Shown: piece by piece, positions 15,697 through 61,662 of the stretch
Layout: every line of letters begins with the position of its first letter
How positions within the stretch are numbered: the first letter of the stretch is position 1
Assembly (NCBI RefSeq): GCF_902713615.1
Contig: NC_052163.1
Coordinates: 17,308,248 to 17,372,247, forward strand
Length of the DNA stretch: 64,000 nucleotides
From: Scyliorhinus canicula
Lineage: Eukaryota
Direction of reading: 5' to 3'
The notes under the pieces: generated by a model
What the model was told of the DNA's origin: nothing
Databases searched by the model: none
The model's input: the letters and a program-made list of their open reading frames with translations, nothing else
Translations under genes and position numbers: made by a program

Positions 15697-15734
15697 ATTG
15701 GCAAATCAGACTATGTCTAACCTTTCTAATTTTC

Positions 15735-15959
15735 TATTTTTTTATTTAAAATTTTTTTTAGAGTACCCAATTATTTTTTTCCAATTAAGGAGCAATTTAG
15801 CATGGCCAATCCACCTACCCTGTACATCTTTGTGTTGTGGGGGTGAAGCCCACACAGACATGGGGCGAATGTGCAAACTCCACACGGAAGTGACCCAACG
15901 CCGGGATTCGAACCCAGGTCCTCAGCGCCATAGGCAGCAGTGCTAACCACTGTGCCACC
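15735..15959 (-). mobile_element. Short A-tailed V-type SINE with long TSD
   Basis: TSD (C)TAACCTTTCTAATTTTC at 15717-15734 and 15960-15977; tail ...AATTGGGTACTCTAAA(A-rich). Confidence 0.9.
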
Positions 15960-17937
15960 CTAACCTTTCTAATTTTCAGCAGCATTCACCGACTCTCATT
16001 TGCCCAGCTACTTGAGTGCAATTAAGTTATCTAAACATAATAAAAATGTTTGTCTCCACCCATTCTTCTCATTTGCCAATGGGTCTATTGTCAGTAAACA
16101 ATTTGCATCTCTCTCGCTGTCCCCAGTCTCCACAAGAAACAAAGCAACTCAGTAGTTTTGAACTGAAGTCTGACCCTGCACACATATATAAAATGAATGT
16201 TATTGGTTACATCATCGGCCTCAAACTTTACCAAACTGTGTCCCAAAATTAAGTTCTCAGCCTCTCCAATTCTCCTTCACATCTTACAACTGCCACTCTA
16301 CAATACTAGGACTAAAAATTTGTAGAGGGAAGAAATAGATTGAAAGTAGATGAGCAAATATATAAAACAGTAAGAGTTTTTCCAAGGGAGAGAGTACCGA
16401 AAGTAAACCCATAGAGGATCAGACTGATATACTTCACCTAGAGAATGAGTAATTAAACACATTCAAGCCTGAGATAGTCAGATTTGAAGCCAAGATCAGA
16501 TAAGCCATGAGCTTACTGAAAGACAGAGCAGGCTCAAGGAGCCATAGGTCCTACCCCTGCTCCTATTTCTTACGTTCTTTTGTATAATATGAAGTAGTAT
16601 GATTTTTTTCAGTCTCCCCATTTGGCTATCTCATTCCCCAACCCAAGTTCCTCTGCTTGGAAACTAATCAGTTAAACATTAATGGATTATAATCATATCA
16701 AAATATTGGTTCCACTCCCTCCTCCAAAATTAATGTGAATTACCTTTTGACCAATGTTGCCAGGAGATTTAATCACTATATGTAAACCACAGTTGAAGTA
16801 TGATGAAAACTTGGCAAGAAAATTGGCAAACAGATCCAATTCCTTACTTTGAAGTTACAGTTGGGTAAAGTTTGAGCAACTAACCTTGTTCCGGTAGGCC
16901 ACCAGCCAATTTCTCAGAAGCTTTCGTTTGATTTTCTCTTAAACTTTAGCTCAGATGCACAAGCTCCATTGTCACCAGCAAATCTTTGCAAACAGTACAT
17001 CCTACAAGATAATTCATTGGAGAAACACGACTTCAAGTGGTGTACAATAAATGGTAATAAAATTAACAAAGCAATTAACCTTGGTACAACTTGCCTCAGG
17101 TATCTCATATCAGTAACTTCCCAAAGTCTTATGGGAGACTAATGAATCAAGATGTTGGATTAGCATTTTATGTGGGAGAAACCAACATAGTTTTAAACTA
17201 TACACTCTCCCATAAATCAGAGAAATAATGTTCAAATTACTGTAAATAATTCCAACCATCAACAATATGTTGCTCGGATTAGTTACTCAATTAACTATTA
17301 AGTGACACTTAAGTATGCCCCATGGCTGGCTGAAGGGAGGTCAGAATGGTTGGCTATTAACTCTCATCATTTCATATTAGATGTACTCACATGCTTTCTT
17401 GAGAAAGATTAACATTTGAGCTTTCTCAGATGCATCACAGATTAAATTACAATCCTTTACAGCAATGCCATTAAAATGGGCCACAGTTTAATGAAAATGT
17501 TAACTTATGCAATGTCATGATGTGTTTCCCACTTTGCTCCGATGCCGAATTCAGGCTCAGGAGGGAAGTTCTACAAGTGGGTGCACATCTCTCCTGATTT
17601 GGGCAGGGGATGGGGGAAAAGAGAGGTGGAGATGAAAAAGAGTGATTGGGATTGATCGTGATTCATTTCAGGCAGTTAGTACGAACCACAATATGAAGGC
17701 AGCCAAGTAACTCAGTAGTTACTTGCTTACAAAAGCACACCAACATCTCACAGGCCACAAGAGGTTGGCAAGAAATTGAGTCTTGCCAGTGACACCCAAA
17801 GTCCAAAACAAAAAGTTAGCTCATTGATCAGGTAGCCAGCAGTCATTGGCACCACACATATTGCTACACTTAAACATCAAATCATACTTAAGTATACAGA
17901 AATGTACATAGTAAATGCAAACCTATGGGACCAATCA

Positions 17938-18118
17938 TGAAATGAAATGAAAATCGCTTATTGTCACGTGGGCTTCAAATGAAGTTACTGTGAAAAGCCC
18001 CAAGTCGCCACATTCCAGCACCTGTTCGGCGAGGCTGGTACGGGAATTGAACTGTGCTGCTGGCCTGCCTTGGTCTGCTTTAAAAGCCAGCTCTTTAGCC
18101 CTGTGCTAAACCAGCCCC
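17938..18118 (-). mobile_element. Short tRNA-head SINE with GTGACAATAAGCG tail
   Basis: GGGGCTGGTTTAGCACAGGG head, GTTCAATTCCC B-box, (ATTTC)n end. Confidence 0.87.
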
Positions 18119-18831
18119 TAACATTGTGACAGAATCACAATGAAAATCCTTGCCCAGGGTTCACTACTCACTCCTCCAGGAAATAGATCTTATTTTAGTC
18201 GTAACATAGCCCCCAATTTCCAACATAAAATTTTAATAACTGAATAATATTGTACTCTTCTCAAATACAAAAGGAAAGAGAAGGGCATGGTTGCATTAAA
18301 GACTGCAGGGTATATAGAATGGGGGAAAGTTTATTTCAAACAGTTAAGATCGGTGCAAAACTATGTCACAAATGATAACAGGTGCCATCGATTCGCAGTA
18401 CCTGGTGGGTGTAATCATGACTGATAATCAGATTCTCCTGTATTTACAGACCACCTCATCATATTCCTTTTAATATTAACCTGATCGGTCTGCTGCAGTG
18501 ACAGAGGAACAGGGCGAGACCACGGATGTATTTTTTTTACAGCTGAACTTCCTGAGAGAAGCAGTAGCCCTGCTCCCCATAGACACAGCGCCGATTCCGG
18601 GGGGGGGGGGGGGGGGGGGTGGCAGGAGGGGGTCCATTGCCCTGGCAACGCCGGCCGGGCTCCATGACATGGGATCCTCGCCTCTCGGAAACACCTATTA
18701 CCCAGGGAATCGAGCTGAAAACCCTTACCGAGCGAGTCGAGCCCAGTGTCGTCGTCGCCGCCGCTCCAGGTTTGACTCTCACATTACAAGCAGGGGTGGA
18801 GAGCTGCCACACCGCCCGCTCACTCACTCAC

Positions 18832-18900
18832 CTGTGGACTTCCGCTCAGAGACAGCTGCCCCGCCCCCCCTCATTCCCCAACAAGCCCTGCCAAAGGGGG
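18832..18900 (-). other. CANT1: Putative non-coding exon 1 of CANT1 (5' boundary approximate)
   Basis: Consensus donor CAG|GTGAGT on the minus strand (exon end 18832) at the edge of the CpG island, pointing toward the CANT1 acceptor at 2438. A second possible donor CG|GTAAGG lies at 18729/18728. Confidence 0.65.
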
Positions 18901-19131
18901 GAAACGAATAGCGCAGGCGCCACCACACCGCGACAAATACGCATGCGTCAACCGGATTAGTTCGGCTGGTGCGCATGCGTCCGCCGGACAGGCTGCGCAT
19001 GCGCGGTCCCGCCTGTCCAACCACTGCGCGTGCGCAGGCCCGGATCCGTTCCTCGGCGCTTGCGCAGTCCCGGTTCCGTTCCTCGGCGCAGGCGCATTAT
19101 GCTCCCTCATCGCTGAGGGCCACGTCTGTTT

Positions 19132-19171
19132 GGAGAGAGAGAGAGAGAGAGTGTTGCTGCTGCTGCTGCTG
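19132..19171 (+). repeat. (GA)n and (GCT)n microsatellites upstream of the COG1 ATG
   Basis: About 10 GA units at 19132-19151, then about 5 GCT units. Confidence 0.9.
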
Positions 19172-19340
19172 AAGGGATAGCAGCGGCTTCAGCCATTGTT
19201 TACCGGTTACTCCAGTCCCAATTCTCTGGTGGTTGCTTTATTTCCGTCGGGAGGCTGCGCTGTGCGAGGCCTGGCTTTGCGGATCACTTTCGGAGCTGAC
19301 GATCCCCTTCCTCTCCCATCCCTCGCCCGGCGCCGGAGAC

Positions 19341-19655
19341 ATGGCCGTGTCCGCCAGGAACCTGCGGATCAGCGACATCCAGGACCCCGGCTCCCTCTTC
19401 GAGCGCTACGGCACCGAGGAGATCCGGCAGGTGGAGCGGAGGGTCCGCGCGGAGATCGAGCAGAAGAAGGAGGAGCTGCGCCAGATGGTGGGCGAGAGGT
19501 ACCGCGACCTGATCGAGGCGGCCGACACCATCACCGACATGAGGCTGTGCTCCGAGAAGGTGGTCAGCTCGGTGCGGGACATGTACGAGTACTGCAGCCG
19601 AATCAGACCGTCCGCCGCCGGCAGAGCGGCTCCTCTCACCGCCAAGCGCAGTAAG
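19341..19655 (+). CDS. COG1: COG1 exon 1
   Basis: gacATGG start; MAVSARNLRISDIQDPGSLFERYGTEEIRQVERRVRAEIEQKKEELRQMVGERYRDLIEAADTI (Vps51/COG1-type N-terminus); in-frame donor AAG|gtgtgt; 315 nt. Confidence 0.95.
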
Positions 19656-20799
19656 GTGTGTGTGCCCGGCAGCCCGTGTCTTCACCGCAGGGAAACCCTC
19701 ACACAGGCCGAGTCCTCTGCCATTCCTTACTGCAGCTTATTATTCTACTGAGTACAGTCTGAGGGGCTACTTCCCCGGGCTGGAGAATCTGGAGTGGAGG
19801 CGGCCAAAAGCAAAATACTGCAGATGCTGGAAATCTGGAATATAAACACCAAAAATGGCTGGATTTGCTAATAGGGTCTGTCAGCATCTGGGAACAGTCA
19901 CTGCTTTGGTCCGTGCGACCGTCCATCAGGGTGCTGGGGGGGGGGGGGGGGGGGCACAGTCCCGGGAGAAGGGTCAATAGTTTTGGACTGAGATCAGCAA
20001 TTTCCTAAAATTGGGAGTTGTGAATCTTTGGAACTCCCAATTCCACAGAGCTGTGGCTTCTCAGTCGTTGAGCATTTTTAGATGCCAGGGGAGTTGAAGA
20101 ATGTAGGAATAGGGTGGAGGTGAGGCAAAATGATCATCCGTTATTTTTTTAAAGGATGCACCAGGCTCGAAGGGCTATATGGCTTATTCCAGCTCTCCAT
20201 TGCTTATCTTCTCTCCACCTTCATTCCACTGGTCTCTTCTGTGTGAATTCATTCAGGCGCAATTTTGACTGGTGTCTATAGCAGTATTAAGTTCATAATC
20301 ATATGCATCGGGTATTACATATTTTTTGTCTTTATCAATTTTCCGCTAACACATTTTCAATGTTTTATCATGACATTAGCAACACCTACCTCATCCAGAA
20401 TTTACAATTTGTATTAATACAGTACTTGCTATACCATAGTTAAGTTATATGTTAAACAGTTCATGATATTTAACTGATCAAAAGAACAGGTCGCAGGATT
20501 AGTTGTACAGTCAGGGGAAGTAACTTGATTATGGACAAAGAGATTACTTTTTGGGGATGCTTTTGAAAGAAGGACAAGGCATACTAATGCAAGTGGAGTT
20601 GAGGGAGAGAATTCTAGTTTATATCATAAAGAATGCTGAAATTGAGGTGGTGATCGACAACTGGGAATTAATGTGGTTTTGGCTGCAGGCAGCAGTGTTT
20701 TGGGCGAGTTTGAATTTATGTATAGTGATCCTCAGAGGATCGGCAAAGTTGATTGAGTGATGACCATTATAATGCGGATTTGAGGAGGTTGTGTTAGAG

Positions 20800-21155
20800 G
20801 AGGATTAGATAGGGAAGATTCAGAAAGAATGTTCCTAATGGTGGTGGGGTGGGAGGTTGGGGTCCAGAACTAGGGGTCATAATTTGAGGATAAGGAGTAA
20901 ACCTTTTAGGACTGATGTGAGGAGAAATTTCTTCACCCAAAGAGCAGTGAATCTGCGGAATTCCCTACCACAAAAAGTAGTTGAGGCCGAAATATTGTGT
21001 CATTTCTAAGAAGGAGTTAGATATAGCTCTTGGGGCTAAAGGGATATGGGGGGAAGGCGGGATCAGAGTATTGAACTTGATCAGCCATGATCATAATGAA
21101 TGATGGAGCAGGCGTGCAGGGCCGAATGGCCTCCTCCTGCTTCTATTTTCTATGT
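20800..21155 (+). mobile_element. CR1 LINE 3' fragment
   Basis: AGAACTAGGGGTCAT...GAGGAGAAATTTCTTCACCCA...GTGAATCTGCGGAATTC...GGGCCGAATGGCCTCCTCCTGCTTCTATTTTCTATG. Confidence 0.85.
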
Positions 21156-22445: not shown

Positions 22446-22690
22446 GTTCAGCAACAATCCCAGGAGAAATTCTACAGCATGGCAGCACAGATAAAGCTCC
22501 TTCTGAATATGCCAGAGAAAATTTGGAGTGCCTTAGAGTCATCACAATATCTCCATGCTACTCAGATGTATCTGCTGTGCTGTCACATTCATAGTATCCT
22601 CCAGTTGGATTCCTCGGGTTCCTATTACAGTCCTGTCCTAGCTCGCTTTCCCATTCTTGTTCGACAAGTAGCAGCAGCAGGTCATTTCAG
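22446..22690 (+). CDS. COG1: COG1 exon 2
   Basis: ttcag| VQQQSQEKFYSMAAQIKLLLNMPEKIWS...QVAAAGHFR |gtaagt; phase 0-2. Confidence 0.95.
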
Positions 22691-36665: not shown

Positions 36666-37466
36666 GCATTGACAAAAGAAGGTTTAGAATCCATCTCCAA
36701 CAGTTCCAAACAGCTCTTGGTTTCGGCTCTGCAGGAACTTCAGGTCAAGAACTCCAACGCTGCTCCCAACAAACCTGTTGAATTTGAGTACAATGTTGCT
36801 GCATTTCTTTGGTCAGAGAGCAGCAATGATCTTTTGACAGACACTGCCTGGGTCAGCGTAACAAATCGTAGCCAGTTTGTCAAGAGTGGACTCTCTATGA
36901 AGGCCCAGGCTCTTACACTTTGTGTTCAAAGTTTCTGTTCTGCACTTGACTCCAAATTAAAAGCTAAATTGGATGATTTAGTTACATACCTTCCACCAGA
37001 TTCGTCCACAGTTAAAGACGGTTTAAATTACCACTCATCCTCACAACTACAGAGTTCAGCATTTGATAGGTATGCTGATACAGCGAAGGTTGAAGAAATG
37101 CTAAGGACGCATTGCCTTTCTTGTGTACAGTACATCCTGGACTGTGTGAAAGCAGAGCTTAAAATGGCAGAAGAGAGACTACAAAATTGCACATACTCTC
37201 CCAATGATTGCAATCTCAATGCTGTCCTTTTCATGGCACGGTTATGCCAATCTATCGGTGAACTCTGCCCTCATCTAAAGCAATGTATTTTGGGTAAATC
37301 GAGTAGTAATGACCAGCTTGTACGTGAGCCCCGTCCTGTCAAGAAGCTGGGTAAAGGGAAGCTGCAAGAAGTGAAGCCAACACAAGCTAAGTGGCAGGAA
37401 GTAAAGGATCAGCTGTTGCAACAGAGCATGAGTGCTTATAGGATTTGGAATGTTACCATATCAAAG
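36666..37466 (+). CDS. COG1: COG1 exon 7 (large exon, 801 nt)
   Basis: ttctgtag| ALTKEGLESIS...SGLSMKAQALT...VLFMARLCQSIGELCPHLKQCILGK...IWNVTISK |gtcagt; phase 0-0. Confidence 0.96.
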
Positions 37467-38458
37467 GTCAGTGACTAATGTACCCGATGTTTGCTTATAA
37501 ATAATGATTTTTGACAATGCTTTTATACTAATGAATTACTCTACGAATTCAGATTTTCGTCCTTCTGTTTAAAAAGATAACCAAAATTTAGAAAGACTGG
37601 AGCAGAACAAAATTTAAGAGCAATGTGATTGATTTTTTTTTCCCTTCTGGAAAATATGTTTGTTCTTGAGTGTACTCCGGTCATCTGTTGCTCTCCTCCT
37701 CCAGTGCTCTGATTCTCCCTTCTAATTCCAGTTCAGTCTTGTACTGCTGATTTATAATCTCCTAGCCCTGTATGTCCTTCTGGGTATCTCCACTTTTAGA
37801 TTGGTTTTCGGAGCCAGAATTGAAGATTTCGGAAAAGGAGGTTCCCACCTGTTGGTTGACTTCTCTGGGGCTGCAGTGTTCTGATCATAATGTTTCCTTT
37901 TACCTTCAGACTAGGCTTTTGTTGCTGATTTAAAATCAAATACACCCCAGAAAATAGATAGAGTGGGAGCAGAGCCTGGTGGTTGACATTCAAATGTTAG
38001 AGAGCTGGAAGAACGGATTTGCAAATAATTAACTTTGTTATTACAAATAGTCCTATTGGATTTATGACTGTGTAAATCTCAGTCACAGACATACACCGTC
38101 TGATTTAATATCATATTTTAACCATATATAATAGTTTTTTGTTCAGTTGGGTCAATCCCAGTTGTACCTAAGCCACTGTATTAGCTGTCACATCCTAATA
38201 GGACCGACTGGTGATTCTTGGCTCGAGTTTGCATGGAATACTTTTTCACAGCAAAAAGTGCATTTTATAGCCCATCATACAAATCTGCTGATGGTTTAAC
38301 TGCTAATATAAGTGGTCGCTCTGTAATAGAAACATGATGATTTTATTTGCCTCTGATTCCATAAGACCTTTGGCCTGGACAGCATTATATATCAATCGCA
38401 AAAATTCATGACTTCCCGATGGAGAGCTCCCAGTGATTGCCAAAGCTGTTGGAAGATT

Positions 38459-38958
38459 GGCTGGGATTCTCCTCTACCCGGCGGGACGGAGTGGCATGAA
38501 CCACTCCGGCGTCGGGCCTCCCCAAAGGTGCGGAATTCTCCGCATCCGGGGCCGAAAGGCCTTCGCCGGCCGCGGAAGTCCGTTCATGCGCTGGTGCGTC
38601 AGCGGCTGCTGACGTCATACCGGCGCATGCGCAGGGGAGGGAGTCTCTTCCACCCCCGCCATGGTGAAAGGCCATGGCGGGGCGGAAGAAAAAGGGTGCC
38701 CCCACGGCACAGGCCTGCCTGCCGATCGGTGGGCCTCGTTCGTGGGCCAGGCCACCGTGGGGGCACCCCCCGGGGTCAGATCGCCCCGTGGAGCCCGGAG
38801 CCCGCCCGCGCCGCCAATCCCGCTGGTCAGGTAGGTGTTTTGATTCCCGCCGGCGGGGGAGGCCTGTCAGCGGCGGGACCTCGGCCCATCATGGGCCGGA
38901 GAATCGCCACGGGGGGCCCGTCGACCGGCGTGGCGCGATTCCCGCCCCCGCCGAATCT

Positions 38959-38990
<32 letters not shown>

Positions 38991-39062
38991 CGGAGAATTC
39001 GGGACACGGCCGGAGCGGGATTGACGCCGGCCGGGGGGGGGGGGGATCGGAGAATTCCGCCC
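38459..39062. mobile_element. MITE, PIF/Harbinger-like
   Basis: TIR GGCTGGGATTCTCC / GGAGAATTCCGCCC; flanks ATT/AAT; CpG-rich. Confidence 0.8.
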
Positions 39063-39065
39063 AAT

Positions 39066-40263
39066 GTTCTCCAATTTAACCCAAAACACTGGTCTAGTCA
39101 CTCCTCATGGCTGAGGGTTCCCAGTACAGTTGAATGTCGCTTAGAGAGAGAGAAGGAGGGAGGTTTCAGCCACATGGTATCACGGCACCTTAGACTAGTG
39201 CGTGGTCAATTCCTGCCCCACTTTGACTTGGGTCGCAACACAGGTGAAATTAAAGTCACTTAAATATCTGATGTCTTTAGTTTGAACCCGGGTGTGCAGC
39301 CACCAGGTTTGTAAATTTTAACACACATAATCTTATTATTTAATTTGTATAAAGTGGGCAGCAATATAACTGGTTAACTTTTATCTAATTCCCAACCCTC
39401 CCTCTTTTTTAAAACATAAATTTAGAGTACCCAATTAATTTTTCCAATTAAGGGGCAATTTAGCAAGGCCAATCCACCTACCCTGCACATCTTTGGGTTG
39501 TGGGGGCAAAACCCATGCAAACACGGGGAGAATGAGCAAACTCCTCACAGACAGTGACCCAGAGATGGAATCGAACCTGGGACCTCGGTGCCGTGAGGCT
39601 GCAGGGCTAACCCACTGCTGCCCTCCCTCCCCCCTTTCTAACTCGTCCCACTCTATTTCACATACACAGCCAGACAACATAGAAGGAAAGGGTGGTGGAG
39701 AGGGAAGAAAATAATGATTAAAAAATAAAAGATGAGGAACTTTGAGTTCAGATGGATATCTTCCAGTTAGGGTCTTTCTCCAGTTTAGGCCTCCAGTTGG
39801 GTGTTATCTTTTCCTTCAGCTTGTAATGGTCTTTACTGTAGACTCGCAGAGATAGCAAGGCAGCCAGCCGACAAGACGGAGAAAACACAGCTTCTTTCTT
39901 CAAGGGTCCCATGTCTTCTGCGTTCTCTTCAAAAAAGCCCACCTGGCAGGAACCAATCGCTGTCTGTGCCAGGCAGAATACCCACTGGCCGCCTGCCAAT
40001 CAATCAAACCAAATCCCTCTAATCTGCTGGGTGCCAGCAAGTCGGGGATTTCCGTTCCCAAATACAAATCTTGAGGACATAGTGTTCCAGTTGTCAAGCT
40101 ATTTGAAATTTTGAATTCTGTACTTCTCCGCTCGACTTGAAGGTGTAACTCAATTAACAACCTCTGGACCAAAAAAATAAAATAAAAGAAATGGGAACAA
40201 AGAGAAATCAATAGGAAGGACTCTGACAATGGACTAACAGCTGTGTGCATTCCATTTGTTACA
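39066..40263 (-). mobile_element. Probable LTR-type repeat interrupted by a SINE (boundaries uncertain)
   Basis: Begins TGTAACAAATGG on the minus strand, with CCAAT-rich segments. The other end and the TSD were not resolved. Confidence 0.35.
39404..39623 (-). mobile_element. Short A-tailed V-type SINE
   Basis: Same AATTGGGTACTCTAAA tail; flanked by CCCTCCCTC-like repeats. Confidence 0.85.
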
Positions 40264-40621
40264 TGTTTCGTCTCTATTTCTAAAATCATACTGCAATGTA
40301 AATGAGAGCATCTAAACAGGAGTTTGGGAACTTAAAACGTATTGGAAAACTTTGAACCATGTTTTATTCTTTCATGCAAAAATAGAATTAAGTTTTACAT
40401 GTAGAAATCCTGTTCAAATATGTTAAGTTTTAAGTAATTGTACTTTAAAATACTAAAGTTTAATTCTTTTATTACACTGACCTTTTCATCGTGATCCATC
40501 GTGTTTTTGAGAATCATGTTAAGTCACAAACTTCACCTCCAGAGCTACCAGGTGATTAAATAATTTGCTGAGATTAGGAGAAATAAATACTTCTGAACGC
40601 AATGGTAATATATCAAATAAT

Positions 40622-40918
40622 GGGTGGCAAGGTAGCACAGTGGTTAGCACTGTTGCTTCATAGCGCCAGGGTTCCGGGTTCAATTCCTAGCTTGGGTCAC
40701 TGTCTGTATGGAGTCTGCACGTTCTCCCCATGTCTGCGTGGATTTCCTCCGGGTGCTCCAGTTTTCTCCCACAAGACCCGAAAGATGTGCTTGTTAGGTG
40801 AATTGGACATTCTGAATTCTCCCTTGGTGCCCGATCAGGCGCCGTAGTGTGGTGACTAGGGAATTCTCACAGTAACTTCAGTGTTAATATCAGCCTACTT
40901 TTGACACTAATAAAGATT
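40622..40918 (+). mobile_element. V-type SINE carrying the CACAGTAACTTC...GACACTAATAAA tail
   Basis: HE1-type head and V-domain, but the 3' part CCCGATCAGGCGCCG...GTGGTGACTAGGG...TCACAGTAACTTCA matches the tail of the 5770/17938/47774 SINEs. Confidence 0.82.
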
Positions 40919-41445
40919 TGATGCCACTGAAATGAAATGCTGCATTGCAAAGCTAATGATCGTGCAGGCCAATTTGTTGCACACAAGGGCTCCTACATAT
41001 AGGGGTATTGGTGAATTATAGCTCAATCTGAGCAACATTTGAGAGATTAAACTACTTTGTGTGGTGTTTGTGGCTTCGCTACAACTGCTGGTAATAACTG
41101 AAGGCCATATATCTTGTGAAATAGAGATGTCTTCCATACGGGTGCTACAAACTGGACCCATGATTGGCAGCATGCTTTACTGGATTGGATACATGTTAAG
41201 AAATATGACGATTGTAAATTTCAGTTATCTCTAAATAGTGAAATTCTAGAATATGGGCAACATATTTCAATTACACTTTGAGAAATTTAATGTAATGTTT
41301 TACAATTATGGTGTGTTGCGATTGTTCCAGCTGGAAACAGAAAAAACTATTTAATTTAAAAACGGTGTAAAGACGAGTAGTCATTGTACTTTCCTCGTCT
41401 TTTTATTCCTTTAACTACTTCATATTTTTGGTTTCTTTTTTTAAG

Positions 41446-43169: not shown

Positions 43170-45455
43170 TTCTTTATATCTTTAACAATTTTACTAACCT
43201 CTAAAATCAGCCATCCAACATAGCCGTCTCTTTCAGATATTAAACCCAGCTGCACCCATGCAAAAGCCATGAGTGGATACATCATACCCAACACCAGAAA
43301 AAAACAAAGAAAGACCACGAAAACCCGGCTCTAAGGTGAAATTACATGTGTACCCCAAAACGCGATCTAACCCAGGACCGGAAGAGAACCAGTGTCAATC
43401 ATATCATGAAAAAATGAAGAAGAGAGGACTACCAGCAACAGGTCCAAGCTATACTCATATCTAGTGTCTCCCATAGAAGAAGAAGAGAGAAAGGACCAGA
43501 GCGACCATGAACTAACTCTCTGGATAATAAGAGCTCAGGATCCAGCCAAGGTCCTGACTCATCACGGCACTCGTGTAGGAACCAGCAACCAAGGCAGAAT
43601 AGACCACTCACACCGACAAGCAGACAACACGCCCCGAATGGAAATGACAGGATACCCACAAAGCCCAAAACATGAGAGGACAATCATTCCAGACCCAGCC
43701 AAAAGGGGTCCCCCACCATGGGGAGAAGGGGGGGCTGTCAAGACGCCCCTCAAAAGGTCGCCCTGGGAGAGGACCGACCCTTTCGCAACCTCCCTCTTCA
43801 CCTAAAAAAAAACAATATTCAAAGTGGACTTACTTCTCCCACCCTTTAACATGGCCGGATTAACTCTAACCGTGGGGGAGTTGGACATCCTTGATAACAG
43901 CAAGGACGAACTAACCCTTTCATCCCTCTCCCTTGCTGAGGCTTGGTGGCACAGTGATTAGTACTGCTACCTCATCGCCAGGGACCTGGGTTCAATTCCG
44001 ACCTTGGGTGACTGCCTGTGTGGAGTCTGCACATTCTCCCCGTGTCTGCGTGGGTTTCCTCCGGGTGCTCCAGTTTCCTCCCAGAGTCCAAAGATGTGCA
44101 GGTTAGGTGGATTGGCCATGCTAAATTGCCCCTTACTGTCCAGGGATAGGTTATGGGGATAGGGGAGTGGGCCTGGGTAGGGTTATCATTCAGAGGGTCG
44201 GTGCAGACTCGATGGGCTGAATGGTATCCTTCTGCACTGTAGGAATTCCATGGTTCTTTCACTTCACCCATACTTCCCACTAAATGAGATGGGGTGAAAA
44301 CAAAGAACAACCCCGTCGCTCAACCATGAGGCACTATAAATCATGATTTTTAAGATTAAAACTATGCAAAAATGCCATTTACCATATACAACTAAACTTG
44401 AACTTGCTAAATCAGGATAATACAGGGTAAAGGCCATCGCATCCATGGTATACACTACCCTGCAGGAAATAGACCGCATCGGGAAAATAGCAACACGATC
44501 AAAAGGCAGCAACGTCCAGGATAATCATTGAATTGCGAGGCAGTCCTCACAACAAAGACATCCACGAAGGAAGCAAAAGCCAAGATAAAGCAGGATCAAT
44601 GAGCACTTTCAGGATCTTTCAAGGATTCCAATAGTCAAAGCACGAGATGCGTTAACTTTCATCATGTCATCTCACCAACACCCAAGCAGTCCACAGCCTA
44701 AGCCTCGGCTAGGAGGGATGCCTCGACCGGTACGGCCACCTCCAACCCCTCACGACGAGCTTCAGGAACATGACAACATAGGACCAGCGATTGGTAGGCC
44801 AAACCCAACACCTGCCTCGAAGACGGGATACAATTTGCCCCATTGAATCTGACGTGCCCAGTCTCCAAATCAAGATCCTCGAAACGTGGCAGCCATTCTT
44901 TGAACTCACTTGGGAACTCTTCCACACCTCATGCCAGTACCAGGCTCAGTTGTGTGCCCCTCTCCACCCCCTCTCCTTTCCCAGAACCCTCCAGGGTGGA
45001 TGGCAAGCCATGCAGCAGGAAATCGACAGAACGGAGTCGGGTCTCCACCTGGGAAAGTGCTCTCTAGTAGAAGAACCTCCTCGTGCACCTCCACGCCTCC
45101 ATAAAAGTACCTGACGACCTGCACCTCAGAGCTGAGACCTTCAGTCAGCATGACCTTTGCATTGGCAGCCACTGTTTGATGCATACAGCACCGCCAAGGT
45201 GGGAGCCCGCTCAATAGCAACTGCACCGCTGAAAGCAGGGCCCACCTCAGCCCACTCTGGCAGACACAGACTAACGAGGATTTTAACATTTCGTCTGTTC
45301 CCTTTCCTACAAGGACACCGGCCAAATACTTCTCAGGAGAAAGTACAAGCCATGCACCCCAAGAAAAGACCAAATGTGAACCGTGCAACAGGATGAAAAG
45401 ATGAGCAGAGCCGGAGCCGGCGGAAATGCAGCCGCTCCTCACGTGACCCCCTCCC
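43170..45455 (-). mobile_element. L1-derived element with 5'UTR and decayed ORF1, no detectable ORF2
   Basis: 5' GGGGGTCACGTGAGGAGCGGC...; ORF1-like EEFPSEFKEWLPRFEDLDLETGHVRF and ...YYPDL; then a TG-rich non-coding stretch ending in an A-rich tail near 43170. Confidence 0.55.
43945..44250 (+). mobile_element. HE1-type SINE with CR1-like tail (nested)
   Basis: Complete head, V-domain and tail. Confidence 0.88.
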
Positions 45456-45688: not shown

Positions 45689-45910
45689 GGGCAGCACGGC
45701 GCAGTGGTTAGCACTGCAGCCACATGACGCCGAGGTCCCAGGTTCAATCCCGGCTCTGGGTCACGGTCCGTGTGGAGTTTGCACATTCTCCCCGTGTCTG
45801 CGTGGGTCTCACGCCAACAACCCAAAGATGTGCAGGTTACGTGGATTGGGCACACTAAATTGTCCCTTAATTGGAACAAAGAATTGGATACACTAAATTT
45901 ATATTAAAAA
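45689..45910 (+). mobile_element. Short A-tailed V-type SINE
   Basis: Flanked by the degenerate repeats ATTAAGTGCCCTT / ATTGAGTTACCTT. Confidence 0.85.
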
Positions 45911-46289
45911 ATTGAGTTACCTTTCTTTTACCTCTTTGCATATTGTGTTCCATTCATTTTGTAATTTGTGAGCTGCCTCTTCCAATTCCAGTTCTCTACT
46001 TTGGTTAAATCCAGTTGTTGGATTTGTGTCCAGCTGCCAGAGGTGCTAAAATGATATCCTAATCTGCATTGCAATTCAATTCCTTTATCAGCATCTCTTT
46101 AAAAAAAAAAATCAAATTGTACCAAAGAATTGTGATATCTTTGATTAGTTATAGGCAGCCTGTCAAAGAGACCACAGTGCCTTTTGTTTTGGTAAAAGAA
46201 ATACCAGTGGCAGGCTTTCGCTTATATATTGAGAAACTTCAAAGTTGCTTCAGCAATCTGTATTAATTGTTTTATAATTACTAAACCGA

Positions 46290-47708: not shown

Positions 47709-47773
47709 ATGATGGATATTGTAAATGCCTTAAAATGCCAGCCGTCTAATCCTCAGTTTTTATGATAACAATA

Positions 47774-47947
47774 TGAAAAATGAAAATGAAATGAAAATCG
47801 CTTATTGTCACGAGTAGGCTTCAATGAAGTTACTGTGAAAAGCCCCTAGTCGCCACATTCCGGCGCCTGTTCGGGGAGGCTGATACGGGAATTGAACCGT
47901 GCTGCTGGCCTGCTTTAAAAGCCAGCCCAGTGTGCTAAATCAGCCCC
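47774..47947 (-). mobile_element. Short tRNA-head SINE with GTGACAATAAGCG tail
   Basis: Near-identical to the 17938-18118 copy. Confidence 0.88.
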
Positions 47948-48968
47948 TGATATAACCTCTGACAGAAAATCTGAATACCATAGATGTTTGTTGGTTTGTT
48001 TCATTTTCTCCAAACCTATATCTGGTTCACTGTAGACCTCTAGTGCATGGATCATGCTCAAAAGTATGCTGAAGAGCTCTAGTGGTAGCCATGTTTTGAG
48101 CTTTGATTCTCCAGACCTACTGTTGTGAAAATAAGGAGCCAGAGCTGCAATCCTACAACTTGGAACTAACGCATTTAAACGTGCAATCCAAACTGGTCTA
48201 CATTTTGTCAAATACCATAAAATCCTTTTTTAAAGTATTACAACTAAGTATGAGAAGTGTCAAATGAAATTCACACTGAAATATAAAATCAGATTAAACA
48301 AGCAAACAATGTAATGTGCTTTTCTTTCAGTATTTCACCAGGTTACTGCAACCATTCTTAATATGGTGGGAAGCAACAACAATTTTGTACCTTCCCCACA
48401 GCACTTGTGTCACCCCATCTGTTTCAACTTTTGAGAACTTTTTTTTTATAACCCCAAATAATCCCTTTTTATTTGATTTACAGTCAGATGATTGCCATTC
48501 AAAATTGCTAGTTCCTGATTACACTTGCAGATCCTGCTTACATTGGCAGCACCTTCCTCACTCCCTCCAATTCCAGTCTGGTCTCGGAGTATTTGGAAGA
48601 TACTAAAGTCAACAATGCATTTTGTATGGGCCAGCAGCAACATTGGTGGTGCATGCGCCAGGAGAGAACTTGTGGCTTTATTTATTTTTCTTCTATTATA
48701 GCTCATTTTATGTTCTGTTTTAGATCCCTATTTGCTTAAAAATAATTTATCATTCAAGAGGTAGGCAGGTAACCAGCTGAATTACCTTTGACAAATTTAC
48801 ATCAGTAAAGATTGTGTCCTGGATTGTAACCTTCTGTTAGAAATTTGTTGCTGTTCCGTGACTTTTGTTTGTTGGCCAAAGTTTTAAAAATTTTTTTAGA
48901 GTACCCAATTATTATTTTTTCCCCAATTAAGGGGCAATTTAGCATGGCCAATCCACCTAACCTGCACC

Positions 48969-51690
48969 TGGACAGGGGCTGGGGATGTGGTGTCAGAGCC
49001 AGGGAAGACAAATGAGGCATTTAGAGAGTATTACCAGGGACTTTGAGGCAGATCCAGGAGGAGAGGAGGAGGACATGGGGTGGTTTCTGGATGAGCTGGA
49101 ATTTCCCAGGTGGAGGAAGCAAAGAGACTGTTGTTGGAGGACCCCCTGGGGCTGAGGGAGGTGCTGGATAGTATCAGGGGTTTGAAGTCGGGGAAGGCTC
49201 CTGGGCCAGATGGGTACCCGGCAGAATTTTATCAGGAATTTGCGGTGGACCTGGCACAACATCTGTTGGGGTTTAATGAAGCACTGGAGAAGGGCTAGTT
49301 GCCGGAGACTATGAAGCAGCCAGTAATCACACTAATCCCCAAAAAAAGGGAAGGATCCGGTGGAATGTAGGTCGTATAAACCCATATCACTATTGAACAC
49401 AGATGTGAAAGTATTGGCTAAGTTGTTGGCGGGGAGGATGGAGGATTGTGTCCCGGGGGTGGTTGCAGAAGATCGAACAGACTTTGTGAAGGGCAGGCAG
49501 CTCGCGAGTAATATAAAACGGCTGTTGAATGTGGTGATGAATCCATCGAGAGCTCTGGTACTAGAGGTGGTGGTCCATGGACGCGGAGAAAGCATTTGAT
49601 CAGGTGGAGTGGCGGTACTTGTTCGAAGTTTTGGGAAGGTTTGTGTTTGGGCCGAGATTTGTGGCTTGGGTGCGTTTGCTGTATGTGGCGGCAAGAGCGA
49701 GGGTGAAGTCGAATGATATGAGCTCACAAAGCTTTGACTTGCACAGGGGTAGGAGGCAGGGGTGGCCGCTGTTGCTACTGCTATTTGCGCTGACAATAGA
49801 GCCATTGGCGATGGCTCTCAGTGAGTCGGCAAAGTGGCAGGGGATGATGAGGGGACAGAGGGAGCATCGGGTGTCGCTCTATGCCGATGACCTCTTGCTG
49901 TATGTTTTGGATCTGTTGGAGAGTGTGGGAAGGATTATGGGCCTGTTGGGGAGGTTTGGAGGGTTCTCGGGATACAAGCTGAGTGTCGGGAAAAGCAAGG
50001 TATTCCCGGTGAATGAGCTGGCACAGCGGGCTAATTTAGGAGGATGCCATTTACGGTAGCGAGGGATAGGTTTAGGTACTTGGGGATTCAGGTAGCAAGG
50101 GAATGGATGGGGGCTCCATAAGTGGAACTTAACGAAGCTGGTAGAGGAGGCCAGGGAGGATAAAAATGAATATTCTGCCGAGGTTGTTGTTTATCTTTCA
50201 TGCTCTCCCGATCTTTAAACCAAAAGCATTTTTCTGGAAAGTGGACACAATCATTTCTGACTTTGTATGGGTGGGGAAGGTGCCGAGGGTGGGGAGAACC
50301 CTGCTACAGAGGCAGCAGGGGGTTGCCAAACATGCTTCATTATTATTGGGCGGCGAATGTGGGCAAGGTGCGGCGGTGGTGGGAAGGAGAAGGGGTAGAG
50401 TGGGTTAGGATGGAGGAGGAATCTTGTAAGATGTCTAGTTTAAGGGCTATGGTGACGGCAGCATTGCCAATGGCTCCGAGTAGGTATTCAGGGAGCCCAG
50501 TGGTCCAGTCCACGGTGAAGATATGGAATCAGCTGAGGAGGCATTTTAGGGTGGAAGGGATGTCGGTGCTAACGCCGCTGTGCGAGAATCATGGGTTTGA
50601 GCCGGGGGCGATGGATAGTGTATACAGGAGGTGGAGGGAAGTGGGGCTGGTCAAGGTGAGGGATTTGTACTCGGAGGAAGGGTTCACCAGTCTGGTGGAG
50701 CTAAGGGAGAGGGTAGAGCTGCCGAGGAGTAGTGAGTTAAGGTATCTACAGGTTAGGGACTTTGCATGAAAGGTCTGGAAGAGATTCCCTTGATTACCGG
50801 TATACACCCTGCTGGAGCGACTGCTGCTTCCAGATGTGGAAGGGGAGGGAAGAATTGGGGATAAGTGGCTGTGGGGAGCAGGGAGGCGAGCGGGTGGTGA
50901 AAATCAAGGAGAGATGGGAATGGAGATCAATTGGGCAGTATGGAGTGAGGCACTGCGAAGAGTAAACGGGACCTCCTCTTATGCAAGGATGAGCCTGATA
51001 CAGTTTAAGATGGTGCACAGGGTGCATGTGACTCAGGTGAGAATGAGTGGGTTCTTTCAGGGGTAGCAGATGAGTGTGAGAGGTGTGGGCGCGGGCCAGC
51101 GAATCATGCGCACATATTTTGGGGTTGTGAAAAATTGGGAAGATTCTGGGCGGGATTGTTCGTGGTCTTAGCCTGGATTAGGAAGGAGGGAGTGGACCGG
51201 GACCCTTTGGTGGTGATATTTGGGGTTTCAGAGGAACCGATGTCTTGGCCTTCGCCTCTCTGATTGCTTGGCGACAAATTTTGCTGCAGTGGCGGTCGGC
51301 ATCGTCATCGGGGGTAGCAGCATGGTTGGGTGACCTGTATGACTTCCTGCGGTTAGAGAAGATAAAGTATGAGTTAGGGGCTCAGCAGGGGAGTTTGAGA
51401 AAAGGTGGTGGATGTTTGTGACCGTGTTTGAGGAGCTGTTCGTCGGGGGGGGGGGGGGGGGGGGGGGGGGTGATGGGGAGGGTGGTGGGGGGTGATGGGG
51501 AGGGAGGTGGGGGGTGATGGGGAGGGAGGTGGGGGGTGATGGGGAGGGAGGTGGGGGGTGATGGGGAGGGAGGGTAAAAAAGGAGAAAAAAGCTGTACAA
51601 ACTGTATAGTTGATTGTTGGGAAGAATGTTTCCCAGGGTGTTTATTTGCTGTAACCTACTTTGATACAAGTTTGAATAAAATTCATTTCT
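48969..51690 (+). mobile_element. 5'-truncated, decayed L1 ORF2 plus 3'UTR
   Basis: KSGKAPGPDG, YKPISLLNTD, DAEKAFD and LYADDLLLY in shifted frames; G-rich 3'UTR; AATAAA at ~51675. Confidence 0.92.
51445..51574 (+). repeat. Poly-G plus ~21-bp G-rich tandem repeat (GGGGGTGATGGGGAGGGAGGT)
   Basis: About 5 units in the L1 3'UTR. Confidence 0.9.
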
Positions 51691-51826
51691 CCAAATAAAA
51701 GAGTCTGCTTGTCTGTCACCATTGATCCACAATAGCTGAATTTGCTGATAGCTTTCAGTGGTGTGTTGTAGTTTTACCTTGCAGGGAATGACTAGAACTC
51801 TACTATCAACTCTATTATGTGACTGT

Positions 51827-54950: not shown

Positions 54951-55060
54951 GTGCTATTTGGGTTATTAACAGGCACAGAGAAACAATACACCAGCAGAAG
55001 TGCACCTTTTAATTCACAAGAACCTCATAACATCTTGCCACTGGCTTCTAGTCAGATCAG
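54951..55060 (+). CDS. COG1: COG1 exon 12
   Basis: cctttag| VLFGLLTGTEKQYTSRSAPFNSQEPHNILPLASSQI(R) |gtaaat; phase 0-2. Confidence 0.95.
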
Positions 55061-56326: not shown

Positions 56327-56405
56327 ATTTGGTTTGTTGCCCCTGAGTATGGTGAGTTCACGAAAGCCGAAATCATCTGTCCGGGGAAATGAAGTTAAGA
56401 GTCTG
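56327..56405 (+). CDS. COG1: COG1 exon 13 (penultimate; terminal exon not found in window)
   Basis: cttccag| FGLLPLSMVSSRKPKSSVRGNEVKSL |gtcagt; phase 2-0. The 3' boundary is less certain because of a competing donor after 56351. Confidence 0.85.
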
Positions 56406-56637
56406 GTCAGTGTAATTACTTTGTTTCTTTTATTATTATTGTGATGTATAATATAGACTTGATTTAAAATATAACGCTAGTATGATTAAAAATGTGTGCA
56501 AGTCTTTTTGTTTTTACAAACTATATTTACTTATACCTCATTGAAGTTTGTTTGCATTTAATATATTGATCTGTCTTTTGTCTAAAGTGATAGCAAGGTG
56601 GAATTCTGACAAATTAGCTCATTATTTGGGGTTACAG

Positions 56638-59600: not shown

Positions 59601-60385
59601 TATTGGAGCACAGATACTGGTGAGGTTAACTGGCTCTGTTGAGTTGAGAGGCAGATGGAGAGAACGCGTTCTGAATAATTCGTGAAAGTTCTATTGTCGA
59701 GAGCAGTGAGTTTCTTACAGTGTAGCCTACAACATGTTCACGTGTTTCCTCTCCATTTTCTCCTGGCAGATGAATGTGTAATGTTTCTCTAGCTAGTGAT
59801 CCACTCTCGGCAAACCTTGTCTCTTGTTGGAAAGCTAGGTCCGTATTCACCCTAGTGGCTTGGTTGCAGGAGTTGCTGATAGCCTCTTTAGACATGTCTG
59901 TTTTTGGGCTCCAACTCCCCTAACCTTCAACCCTCCCAAGATGTCTTCAAGGCAATGGAAGTATTCGTCCATCGCTGGGAGTTTGGTTCATAGAGTGCAA
60001 ACGTGGGGCCAGAGTTCCTAAGAAGTTTTAGGCTTAGCCCACAAGGGGCCCAATTTCTCTGTGTTGCCATGAACAGAGGACTTGCCGATGGAGTGGCTAT
60101 GTTCTCACTGGGAGGGATTTCTGCTTTAGGTTCTTCCTTTCACATTGCTTCCAAGCCATGGTGTAGGCTGAAAACGAGTGGCTGAAAGTAGGAAGCACGT
60201 TGACTGTCTTCACTCACAAACTTGATGCATCACATCGACGTATTGGACACACAACATGCCAATGCTTTGCGAACCTTTGGATCCAACCTGGAAGGTGAAG
60301 TGGGGCATCCTGACCTGTGGGCAATCCAAGGTCTCTCTACATTTTGCTCAGGCATGTGCCCTGGAGATGTCACTTTAGTTTTGCT
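56638..60385 (-). mobile_element. Near-full-length decayed RTE-clade LINE
   Basis: QETRFAESGSL (EN), NTFFQNKLCHKVSWRH, KSPGAD, CGFRTGRSTIDM...QLQEKCREQ, GVKQGCVLAPTLFGI (RT), KLHVYQAC, C-terminal FICSK..RNC; RTE-like 5'UTR near 60290-60365; GTTACAG on both flanks. Confidence 0.85.
57925..58225 (-). mobile_element. CR1 3' fragment nested in the RTE
   Basis: Reverse complement of GGGCCAAATTGCCTCCTTCCACACTGTAACAATTCTGTG tail; interrupts the RTE frame after EKCREQKK. Confidence 0.75.
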
Positions 60386-60659
60386 GCTTAGTTACAGTGT
60401 GTTACTTAAACTTTCTAGTAATGATAAATAAAATATATTCATAGTGCTCTTTTATAACATACACAGATACTGATGATCAAGTACATTGATATTCTGAGAA
60501 GTAGCACACATTTAACTGCACATACCAAACACTAATTCAGTGGAACAAGTGCATCATATTAACAAGAGCAAGACCCTTGGCTCTTCCCTCATCCCACATA
60601 CCAAGACCATGGGCAATTTTGATTGTTAAATCGGTACTATGTAATTTATTTTTATTGTT

Positions 60660-60966
60660 TTTTAAAAATAAATTAAGAGTACCCAATTTATTTTTTCCAA
60701 TTAAGGGGTAATTAAGGTGGTGTCCAATCCACCTACCTTGCACATCTTTTTAAAAAGAACTCAAGAGTACCCAATTATTTTTATTTTGCAATTTAGCGTG
60801 TCCAATCAACCTAACCTGCCCATCTTTGGGTTGTGGGGGTGAAACCCACGCAGACACGGGCTGAGTGTGCAAACTCCACACGGACAGTGACCCAGAGCCG
60901 GGATCGAACCTGGAACCTCGGCACCGTGAGACTGCAGTGCTAACCACTGTGCCACCGTGCTGCCCC
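60660..60966 (-). mobile_element. A-tailed V-type SINE with duplicated 3' segment
   Basis: ATTTTTATTGTT at 60648-60659 and 60969-60980 encloses a full SINE plus a second copy of its last ~90 nt. Confidence 0.85.
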
Positions 60967-61662
60967 TAATTTTTATTGTTGGTACTGCACTACATATTCT
61001 CACAAAAGACACTTAAGTAAAAATTACATTTTTAAAAATGTGTGTGATTTAATTTAACTGCTTTCTTTAAATTCAGTTTCAGTTGACACATTGAGCTGTC
61101 AGAGCTGCCATCTTCATGATGAAGCTTCACTGGGTATTTCATTGTCCTGTGTGCAGTGCTTTGCCTTGCAGCTTGAGTAACTATATACAGTAGACGGTAT
61201 TATGATTGGGTAACAATTAATACCAGTGTATTTGTGGTGAGTGAGTGCGTTAGTGGTAGAGTGAAGCTGAAATCAAGCCTTTTTAAGACTAACTTTGCTG
61301 AAACCTTAGTTTGAACCGGCTCAGTTCTTTAAATTTTCTCTAAAATTAGTTGAGAAATCTCATCTCTTCTAAGTAACCAAAGAATAATGTGAGCTACGCA
61401 TTTTGTTTTAAAGCTCAGAGCTTCCTGTTTCTCTAGTAGACTGGCATTGAGTTTTCAGCTGAAACTGAATGTGAAATAATCACTGTATTTAAAATATCAA
61501 GATGACACTCCCTTATTATAGTTTAAAATTTAAATTTAAATATTGCTAAATTAAAACAAAAACAAATTGCTTGGCCTATTGTCTTTATCCCAATTCCCAC
61601 TTTTAAAATCTTTTTGTCTTATTTCTATTGTCTAAATAAAGCTTTATTTTTCTTCCTGATCC

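What the first reader, a model, noticed from the sequence alone, without database searches (positions are those of the whole stretch)
15717..60980. A V-type SINE subfamily appears to have switched to L1 machinery
Seen: copies at 15735, 28324, 39404, 45689 and 60660 share head and body with the CR1-tailed SINEs (773, 15365, 24956, 31293, 43945). They stop after CTAAATTGCCCCTTAATTGG...AATTGGGTACTCTAAA plus an A-rich tail. They carry long TSDs (17-18, 15 and 12 bp perfect; two others shorter or degenerate), and the clearest sites read TT/AAAAG and CT/GAAAA, like the L1 copies here. Established: HE1 SINEs share their 3' tail with the CR1-type LINE HER1; long TSDs, A-tails and TT/AAAA sites are L1 hallmarks best known from mammalian Alu/B1/B2. 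Inference: Alu-like, L1-dependent SINE mobilisation arose independently in a shark. I cannot tell whether this is already published.
Basis: partly seen in the sequence, partly recalled or inferred. Interest (0 to 1): 0.7.

Follow-up and report, generated by a model that had tools for sequence, protein, structure and literature searches.

The report
Short-tailed shark SINE with L1-like footprints
A distinct subfamily of a common shark SINE has lost its usual CR1-type tail, ends in a T-run plus a short A-run, and inserts with long L1-style duplications like the true L1 elements beside it; L1 is therefore its likely driver, though this is not proven.

Summary
The window carries five full-length and two 5'-truncated copies of a short-tailed tRNA-headed SINE. 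They share head and body with five CR1-tailed copies and one copy with a third tail type.

The short form is a real subfamily. It has a 24-bp body deletion, diagnostic substitutions and a common roughly 40-nt tail. That tail is not plain poly(A): it ends in a T-run followed by only 4-7 A.

Four of five full-length copies have significant target-site duplications (18, 17, 12 and 9 bp). None of seven copies with other tails does (Fisher p = 0.01). The only other insertions here with an A-run plus a long duplication are two genuine L1-clade elements (15 and 13-14 bp). Their sites also read T/GAA.

The tail motif is on no LINE end in this window. The CR1 tails fold into a conserved hairpin that the short tail lacks.

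L1-type mobilisation is the best reading (about 0.55). It rests on seven copies, and I could not search a LINE library, so a different partner LINE remains possible.

I found no paper describing this. The closest precedent is marsupial WSINE1. First-stage readers flagged the same subfamily in 37 notes on other windows of this genome; none showed a follow-up.

The parts
15735..15959 (-). Short-tailed SINE copy S1, slightly 5'-truncated. Flanked by a perfect 18-bp TSD at 15717-15734 and 15960-15977. The site in element orientation reads GCT/GAAAAT.
   Evidence: P = 0.0005. A contig of a roughly 5% diverged relative ends 16 nt inside its head next to the same flank.
28326..28554 (-). Short-tailed SINE copy S2. 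Perfect 17-bp TSD at 28309-28325 and 28555-28571. The site reads TT/AAAAGG if the A's are taken as shared with the tail.
   Evidence: P = 0.0015
39405..39620 (-). Short-tailed SINE copy S3. 9-bp TSD at 39396-39404 and 39621-39629. The site is G-rich (G/GAGGGAGGG). Its own A6 follows a T-run.
   Evidence: P = 0.014
45689..45911 (+). Short-tailed SINE copy S4. It has only a degenerate flank match (10/13 by eye), which is not significant.
   Evidence: P = 0.21
60660..60968 (-). Composite: a full-length short-tailed copy (about 60752-60966) joined at its tail to a 5'-truncated copy (about 60660-60751, starting at AAAGATG). The whole unit is flanked by one 12-bp TSD at 60648-60659 and 60969-60980. 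The inner junction has no TSD of its own.
   Evidence: P = 0.002. Formation in a single event by template switching is an inference.
48883..48967 (-). 5'-truncated short-tailed copy (last roughly 85 nt). No TSD found. It abuts an old L1 fragment.
6280..11884 (-). Near full-length but frame-broken L1-clade LINE: ORF1, endonuclease and RT, an AATAAA signal and an A11 tail. Perfect 15-bp TSD at 6265-6279 and 11885-11899. The site reads TT/GAAATT.
   Evidence: PDB matches to human L1 RT (5e-29), ORF1p (3e-7) and endonuclease (2e-20).
34088..35454 (-). 5'-truncated L1 of a different lineage (44-51% aa identity to the full-length copy). A-rich tail. 13-14-bp TSD at 34074-34087 and 35455-35468. The site reads TTA/GAATAG.
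49143..51700 (+). Older 5'-truncated L1 of a third lineage, with a G-rich 22-bp tandem array in its 3' UTR. No TSD recovered.
29733..30556 (-). Old L1-like 3' fragment ending in A8. No TSD recovered.
773..1112 (+). CR1-tailed SINE copy (comparison set). The others are at 15365-15700(-), 24956-25216(-), 31291-31612(+) and 43945-44252(+). All have the full body, a tail hairpin and TTCTATG-type ends, and none has a significant TSD.
40619..40925 (+). Copy with the same head and body but a third tail type. That tail is shared with another tRNA-SINE family at 5780-5943(-), 17937-18116(-) and 47780-47946(-). No TSD.

Best explanation
This is a derived subfamily of the shark tRNA-headed V-domain (HE1-like) SINE.

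Shown:
- It keeps the Pol III A and B boxes and most of the conserved body.
- It has a 24-bp deletion in that body.
- It has replaced the CR1-type tail (hairpin plus TTCTATG-type repeats) with a roughly 40-nt tail: TTAATTGG, an A-rich spacer, AATTGGGTACTCTAAATTTAT, a T-run, then a short A-run.
- Copies are flanked by 9-18-bp duplications.
- The A-run belongs to the element, not the target, in three of four readable cases.

Inferred:
- The RNA is made by Pol III.
- It ends at or beyond the T-run and carries a few A's.
- It is copied into staggered nicks at (T)/(G or A)AA sites by target-primed reverse transcription. The enzyme would be an L1-clade protein that needs only the terminal A's, as with mammalian L1-dependent SINEs.
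- The composite copy flanked by a single duplication fits a template switch during one such event.
For: - Subfamily identity: the alignment shows the 24-bp deletion, diagnostic substitutions and the common tail in all 7 copies.
- TSDs: 4 of 5 full-length short-tailed copies are significant (18, 17, 12 and 9 bp; P = 0.0005 to 0.014 against 4000 controls). None of 7 other-tailed copies is. My Fisher test on those counts gives p = 0.010.
- A scan of the whole window for an A-run followed by a direct repeat of at least 12 bp gives four credible insertions: two of these SINEs and two L1 elements. Its other 11-12-bp matches look like chance or an internal SINE repeat. It missed the 28326 copy, whose A's lie inside its TSD.
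- True L1 is present. The 5.6-kb element matches human L1 RT, ORF1p and endonuclease. It has an A11 tail and a 15-bp TSD. A second L1 has a 13-14-bp TSD.
- Sites: SINE CT/GAAAAT and TT/AAAAGG; L1 TT/GAAATT and TA/GAATAG. This is read directly from the sequence.
- CR1 tails fold into a conserved nested hairpin with compensatory changes. The short tail gives only a weak AU hairpin, z about -0.6.
- The tail box is found only in the SINE copies, not at any LINE end in the window.
- Precedent: WSINE1 is a tRNA head, a truncated conserved domain and poly(A), with TSDs, and is taken to be L1-propagated (PMC3403934).
Against: - The sample is only 5 full and 2 truncated copies, with four readable sites. 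Two of those sites (G/GAGGGA and C/AACAAT) are not A/T-rich.
- The A-run is short (4-7). It is preceded by a conserved, specific roughly 40-nt tail and a T-run. A conserved tail is what a stringent, tail-recognising LINE would require.
- A T-run upstream of the A's should stop Pol III before any templated A's.
- Long TSDs are not unique to L1.
- I could not search any LINE library or the rest of the genome for a LINE with this tail.
- Short-tailed copies are younger here (7-13% from their majority sequence) than CR1-tailed ones (10-22%). Part of the TSD contrast could therefore be decay. However, the two CR1-tailed copies at 10% also lack TSDs.
- Whether L1 and the SINE were active at the same time was not tested.
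Confidence: 0.55

Rival explanations
1. The short tail is itself a LINE-derived recognition tail. The subfamily would be mobilised in the classical stringent way by a LINE of another clade (for example RTE, L2, Rex1 or Nimb), or by a tail-specific Tx1 or L1 lineage. That LINE's 3' end would read like ...AATTGGGTACTCTAAATTTATTTTT(A)n, and it would also make long staggered cuts.
For: About 40 nt of non-A tail sequence is conserved in all 7 copies, including a possible small hairpin (CCCTTAATT with AATTGGG). The A-run is short. Most SINE-LINE pairs share a tail, and a few L1-clade LINEs do too (PMC3747384). Other notes of this scan report U2-derived SINEs with A-rich tails in this genome; in crocodilians that kind is attributed to Tx1 (PMC4494074).
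Against: No LINE end in the window carries the motif. The hairpin is weak and not better than shuffles. The terminal box resembles the SINE's own body box (11 of 16 positions; two body boxes come up), which fits an internal duplication rather than capture from a LINE. The only elements here with the same A-run plus TSD signature are L1s.
Confidence: 0.28
2. There was no change of partner. The TSD contrast between tail types would be an effect of age or chance in a small sample, and the short form would be a truncated derivative carried along by the same machinery as the CR1-tailed form.
For: CR1-tailed copies in the window are on average more diverged. Only 12 copies were compared in all.
Against: Each of the three longest TSDs has P of 0.002 or less, and the contrast gives Fisher p = 0.010. 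Two CR1-tailed copies of similar divergence (10%) have no TSD. The short form lacks the whole CR1 hairpin and repeat end, which established knowledge of CR1- and L2-type LINEs says is needed for recognition.
Confidence: 0.07

Closest known systems
WSINE1, the marsupial short CORE-SINE (PMC3403934)
   Same: A tRNA head, a truncated highly conserved domain, no LINE-derived tail, a terminal A-run, flanking TSDs, and sister subfamilies that keep LINE-type tails.
   Different: WSINE1 carries the CORE domain, not the V domain, and is in mammals. It has a plain poly(A) tail, whereas the shark form has a specific roughly 40-nt tail and a T-run before a short A-run.
HE1 V-SINE of sharks and rays, with partner LINE HER1 (listed in PMC3747384, Table 1)
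   Same: A tRNA-type head with A and B boxes, and the conserved central body shared with the CR1-tailed copies in this window.
   Different: The short form lacks the CR1/HER1-type tail and hairpin. It has a 24-bp deletion in the conserved body and makes long TSDs.
Alu and B1 (mammalian L1-dependent SINEs without a terminator before the A-tail)
   Same: No LINE tail, a terminal A-run, TSDs of about 9-18 bp, and A-rich nick sites in some copies.
   Different: Alu and B1 have a 7SL head and no T-run before the A-tail. Their L1 dependence has been shown experimentally, which is not the case here.
B2-type 'T+' mammalian SINEs (PMC8466645)
   Same: A Pol III terminator-like T-run lies immediately upstream of the A-tail (6 of 7 copies).
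   Different: The defining AATAAA signal is absent from the majority sequence (present in 2 of 7 copies). Polyadenylation of the transcript is untested.
Crocodilian SINEU, mobilised by Tx1 (PMC4494074)
   Same: A non-mammalian SINE attributed to an L1-related (Tx1) LINE by insertion signature rather than by a shared tail.
   Different: SINEU shows target-sequence specificity (the Mariner-N4 element). The shark copies sit at unrelated sites.

Membership tests
V-SINE superfamily (HE1-like) | tRNA-related head with Pol III A and B boxes | tested here: met
   TGGCACAGTGG and GGTTCGA(A)TCC boxes are present in the short-tailed copies. ARAGORN did not call the heads as tRNAs, so the tRNA origin itself rests on resemblance.
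V-SINE superfamily (HE1-like) | Central conserved V domain | tested here: inconclusive
   The body is shared with the CR1-tailed copies over about 100 nt, less a 24-bp deletion. The published V consensus was not available (paper not held). Its identification as the V domain rests on my memory of that consensus.
V-SINE superfamily (HE1-like) | 3' tail shared with a CR1-type partner LINE (HER1) | tested here: not met
   The short form ends before the CR1-type tail and lacks its hairpin and TTCTATG-type repeats. The five long copies do have them.
L1-dependent SINEs (Alu/B1/WSINE1 type) | No LINE-derived tail; the 3' end is an A-run | tested here: inconclusive
   An A-run of 4-7 nt belongs to the element in 3 of 4 readable cases. 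It follows a conserved specific tail and a T-run. The LINE origin of that tail could be excluded only within the window.
L1-dependent SINEs (Alu/B1/WSINE1 type) | Target-site duplications of roughly 7-20 bp | tested here: met
   18, 17, 12 and 9 bp in 4 of 5 full-length copies, against none in 7 other-tailed copies. L1s in the window have 15 and 13-14 bp.
L1-dependent SINEs (Alu/B1/WSINE1 type) | Insertion at TT/AAAA-like endonuclease sites | tested here: inconclusive
   Four sites: CT/GAAAAT, TT/AAAAGG, G/GAGGGA and C/AACAAT. The two L1 sites are TT/GAAATT and TA/GAATAG. This is too few for a logo.
L1-dependent SINEs (Alu/B1/WSINE1 type) | L1-clade LINEs present and active in the same genome at the same time | tested here: inconclusive
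   L1-clade elements of at least three lineages are present. All copies here are broken, and overlap in activity period was not tested.
L1-dependent SINEs (Alu/B1/WSINE1 type) | Trans-mobilisation by L1 proteins in an assay | not testable with these tools
   This needs an experiment.
T+ SINEs (B2 type) | AATAAA signal upstream of the terminator | tested here: not met
   AATAAA is absent from the majority sequence and present in 2 of 7 copies.
T+ SINEs (B2 type) | Pol III terminator T-run directly before the A-tail | tested here: met
   A run of at least 4 T precedes the A-run in 6 of 7 copies.

The most novel reading that the evidence does not exclude
Cartilaginous fish have an L1 lineage with relaxed, A-run-based template choice that amplified a Pol III SINE to high copy number. 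That would be a third case beside mammals and flowering plants. The SINE's transcripts would end at a T-run and receive non-templated A's, a B2-like route so far described only in mammals.
Probability: 0.2. Interest if true: 0.7.

Novelty: new member of a known kind. Interest (0 to 1): 0.45.

Why it matters
The reviews I could read treat relaxed, poly(A)-based mobilisation of SINEs by L1 as a feature of mammals and flowering plants. Other vertebrate SINEs are described as sharing a specific tail with a CR1, L2 or RTE partner (PMC3747384, PMC5786205).

A high-copy shark SINE that dropped its CR1 tail and shows L1-type footprints would mean one of two things. Either this way of working is older and more widespread in vertebrates than thought, or it arose again.

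It would also give a natural pair of sister subfamilies, with the same head and body but different tails. That pair could be used to compare the integration signatures of two LINE machineries in one genome.

The claim can be tested directly from the assembled genome.

Tried and rejected
1. Orthologous empty sites. I looked for host genes to fetch the same locus from other sharks. An SDF2L1-like exon (5410-5574) gave shark proteins.
2. More copies from public collections. A tail pattern in metagenome contigs gave one chance hit inside a bacterial gene. A body pattern found nothing in bacterial genome contigs or viral contigs.
3. Reads. Only short Logan contigs were available. They show that the family is massively repeated in three organisms, and that the 15735 copy is shared with a roughly 5% diverged relative. 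They gave no empty site and no usable copy numbers.
4. TSDs for the two older L1 fragments: none found.
5. A structured recognition hairpin in the short tail: only a weak AU stem, no better than shuffles.
6. Literature. Eight searches and several papers gave no description of an A-tailed or L1-type V-SINE in sharks. The original V-SINE paper is not held.
7. I considered reading the composite at 60660-60968 as two nested insertions. I rejected this because the inner junction has no TSD of its own.
8. I built no L1 consensus or repaired L1 frame.
Full report
**What is there.** Reading the five listed places confirmed short SINE copies. Each has a tRNA-like head with A and B boxes and a conserved body. 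Each ends in ...CTAAATTGCCCCTTAATTGG, an A-rich spacer, AATTGGGTACTCT, and then an A/T-rich end. BLAST and a profile search of the window found 14 pieces of this SINE group:
- five full-length short-tailed copies;
- two 5'-truncated short-tailed copies, at 48883-48967 and at 60660-60751. The second is fused to the full-length copy at 60752-60966;
- five copies with a long CR1-type tail;
- one copy with a third tail type (40619);
- one fragment (4335-4383).

**It is a true subfamily.** In the alignment, all short-tailed copies share three things against the CR1-tailed copies: a 24-bp deletion inside the conserved body, several diagnostic substitutions in head and body, and the same roughly 40-nt tail. 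They are not random truncations. The deletion lies inside a domain that is otherwise conserved, so I infer that the short form is the derived one.

The terminal box AATTGGGTACTCTAAA occurs only in these seven copies. Two weaker matches fall on the related box GATTGGCCATGCTAAA of the SINE body. The tail may therefore have arisen partly by internal duplication. That is a weak inference, since only 11 of 16 positions match.

**The tail is not plain poly(A).** The majority reading of the seven ends is ACTCT-AAATTTAT-T-run-A-run. Six of seven copies have at least 4 T directly before 4-7 A. In three of the four copies with clear flanks, the A-run is absent from the 5' copy of the target, so it belongs to the element. 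A T-run before the A-tail is the layout of mammalian T+ SINEs such as B2 (PMC8466645, abstract seen), not of Alu. The AATAAA signal that defines that class is missing from the majority sequence.

**Target-site duplications.** I scored the best ungapped match between the 5' flank and the 3' flank of each copy. I compared these scores with 4000 random position pairs at the same spacing (exact and one-mismatch versions).
- Short-tailed copies: 18 bp (P = 0.0005), 17 bp (0.0015), 12 bp around the composite (0.002), 9 bp (0.014), and one not significant.
- The five CR1-tailed and two third-tail copies scored 3-6, at chance level.
- Four of five against none of seven gives Fisher p = 0.010.

One caveat applies. 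Short-tailed copies are 7-13% from their majority sequence and CR1-tailed copies 10-22%, so decay contributes to the contrast. However, the two CR1-tailed copies at 10% also lack duplications.

**L1 in the window.**
- The minus-strand element at 6280-11884 encodes an ORF1p-like RRM/CTD, an APE-type endonuclease and an RT. These match human L1 proteins in the PDB at 3e-7, 2e-20 and 5e-29 (Pfam). It has AATAAA, an A11 tail and a perfect 15-bp duplication. Its frames are broken.
- A second, 5'-truncated L1 of another lineage lies at 34088-35454. It has 44-51% amino-acid identity to the first and a 13-14-bp duplication.
- Two older L1 fragments have none.

I scanned the whole window for an A-run followed by a direct repeat of at least 12 bp within 7 kb. 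The credible insertions it returned were two short-tailed SINE insertions and the two L1s. Its other 11-12-bp matches look like chance, and one is a repeat inside the composite SINE. It missed the 28326 copy, whose A's lie inside its duplication.

Nick sites in element orientation are as follows:
- SINE: CT/GAAAAT, TT/AAAAGG, G/GAGGGA, C/AACAAT
- L1: TT/GAAATT, TA/GAATAG

The resemblance is suggestive, but six sites do not make a logo.

**Tails and structure.** The CR1-type tails fold into a nested hairpin (GUGCAGA...GGGCU-loop-GGCC...UCUGCAC). It is kept in the divergent 15365 copy through changes on both sides. The tails then end in TTCTATG-type repeats. This fits the HE1/HER1 pairing listed by Ohshima (PMC3747384). 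The short tail gives only a weak AU stem, no better than shuffles.

**The composite copy.** At 60660-60968 a full-length copy runs through its T-run and two to five A's straight into a second copy that starts at AAAGATG. A single 12-bp duplication encloses both (14 bp with one mismatch). The inner junction has none. I read this as one integration event with a template switch. That behaviour is known for L1 and other non-LTR reverse transcriptases, but here it is an inference.

**Age and spread.** Contigs of a relative about 5% diverged in unique DNA end 16 nt inside the head of the 15735 copy, next to the same flank. That insertion therefore predates the split. Contigs of three organisms pile up massively on both SINE types, so the family is abundant. 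The figures are not copy numbers.

**Beyond the window.** I could not obtain more shark DNA. The key refuting test, whether any LINE in this genome ends in this tail, is therefore answered only for these 64 kb.

**Earlier notes.** First-stage readers of this scan flagged the same subfamily and the same idea in 37 notes on other windows of this genome. No follow-up was visible. That shows recurrence of the pattern as read by the same kind of reader. It is not independent support. Other followed-up notes mention chimeric retrocopies and U2-derived SINEs with A-rich tails in this genome. I did not test these; they keep a Tx1-like partner in play.

**Comparison with what is known.** The closest published case I found is marsupial WSINE1. 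It has a tRNA head, a truncated CORE domain, poly(A) and flanking duplications, and is 'expected to be LINE1 propagated' (PMC3403934). Reviews describe relaxed L1 recognition as a feature of mammals and flowering plants, and note that very few SINEs share a tail with an L1-clade LINE (PMC3747384; PMC5786205). I found no paper on an A-tailed or L1-type V-SINE in cartilaginous fish. Curated repeat libraries could not be consulted, so an unpublished library entry for this family is likely to exist.

**Verdict.** I put L1-type mobilisation at about 0.55, a different tail-recognising LINE partner at about 0.28, and an age or chance artefact at about 0.07. This is a new member of a known kind (a SINE that dropped its LINE tail for an A-run), in a new lineage and with a T-run-then-A-run end. 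Interest is moderate, and the question can be settled from the assembled genome.

I did not do this, and I list it under referred steps.

Noticed in passing
window 60660-60968 (-): A full-length SINE is fused through its tail to a 5'-truncated copy of the same SINE, with one 12-14-bp TSD around the pair and none at the inner junction. It looks like a single integration with a template switch.
   Followed up: partly
window 5780-5943(-), 17937-18116(-), 47780-47946(-), 40619-40925(+): A second tRNA-headed SINE family (ARAGORN calls two of its heads 'tRNA-Phe') ends in ...GTGACAATAAGCGATTTTCA followed by ATTTC-type repeats. The same tail is attached to the V-type head and body at 40619. One tail is thus shared by two SINE families, which looks like module exchange.
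   Followed up: partly
window 15757-15772 and equivalents, compared with the body box about 30 nt upstream: The terminal box AATTGGGTACTCTAAA resembles the SINE body's own box GATTGGCCATGCTAAA (11 of 16). The short tail may have arisen by internal duplication rather than capture from a LINE.
   Followed up: partly
window 1657-2415(-), 5410-5574(-), 19233-19751(+): Host gene pieces: the first coding exon of an apyrase (CANT1-like); a lone SDF2L1-like MIR exon that is only 82-85% identical to its top elasmobranch and chimaera SDF2L1 hits, with no neighbouring exons found (possibly a paralogue or a pseudo-exon); and a first exon with a Vps51/Exo84/COG1 N-terminal domain. If that last gene runs rightwards, most of the SINE copies lie in its introns.
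   Followed up: partly
window 34354-34379, 38960-38990, 51453-51573, and about 10389-10425 and 11250-11262 inside the full-length L1: Long G or C homopolymers and a G-rich 22-bp tandem array (5.5 copies) lie in or next to L1 sequences, in the inter-ORF region and the 3' UTRs. They recur across the divergent L1 lineages here.
   Followed up: no
window 36669-39079 (+): Two ORFs of 269 and 223 aa have no Pfam match and lie next to a 31-nt G run. They may belong to another mobile element, but I did not identify them.
   Followed up: no
window 15944-16644, contig of run X9: A relative about 5% diverged in unique DNA carries the 15735 SINE insertion at the same site. That copy is therefore older than the split of the two organisms, although its 18-bp TSD is still perfect.
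   Followed up: partly
L001 12278-12304: The only metagenome match to the tail pattern lies in a bacterial-looking coding region of a 190-kb contig. There is no SINE around it, so it is a chance match.
   Followed up: yes
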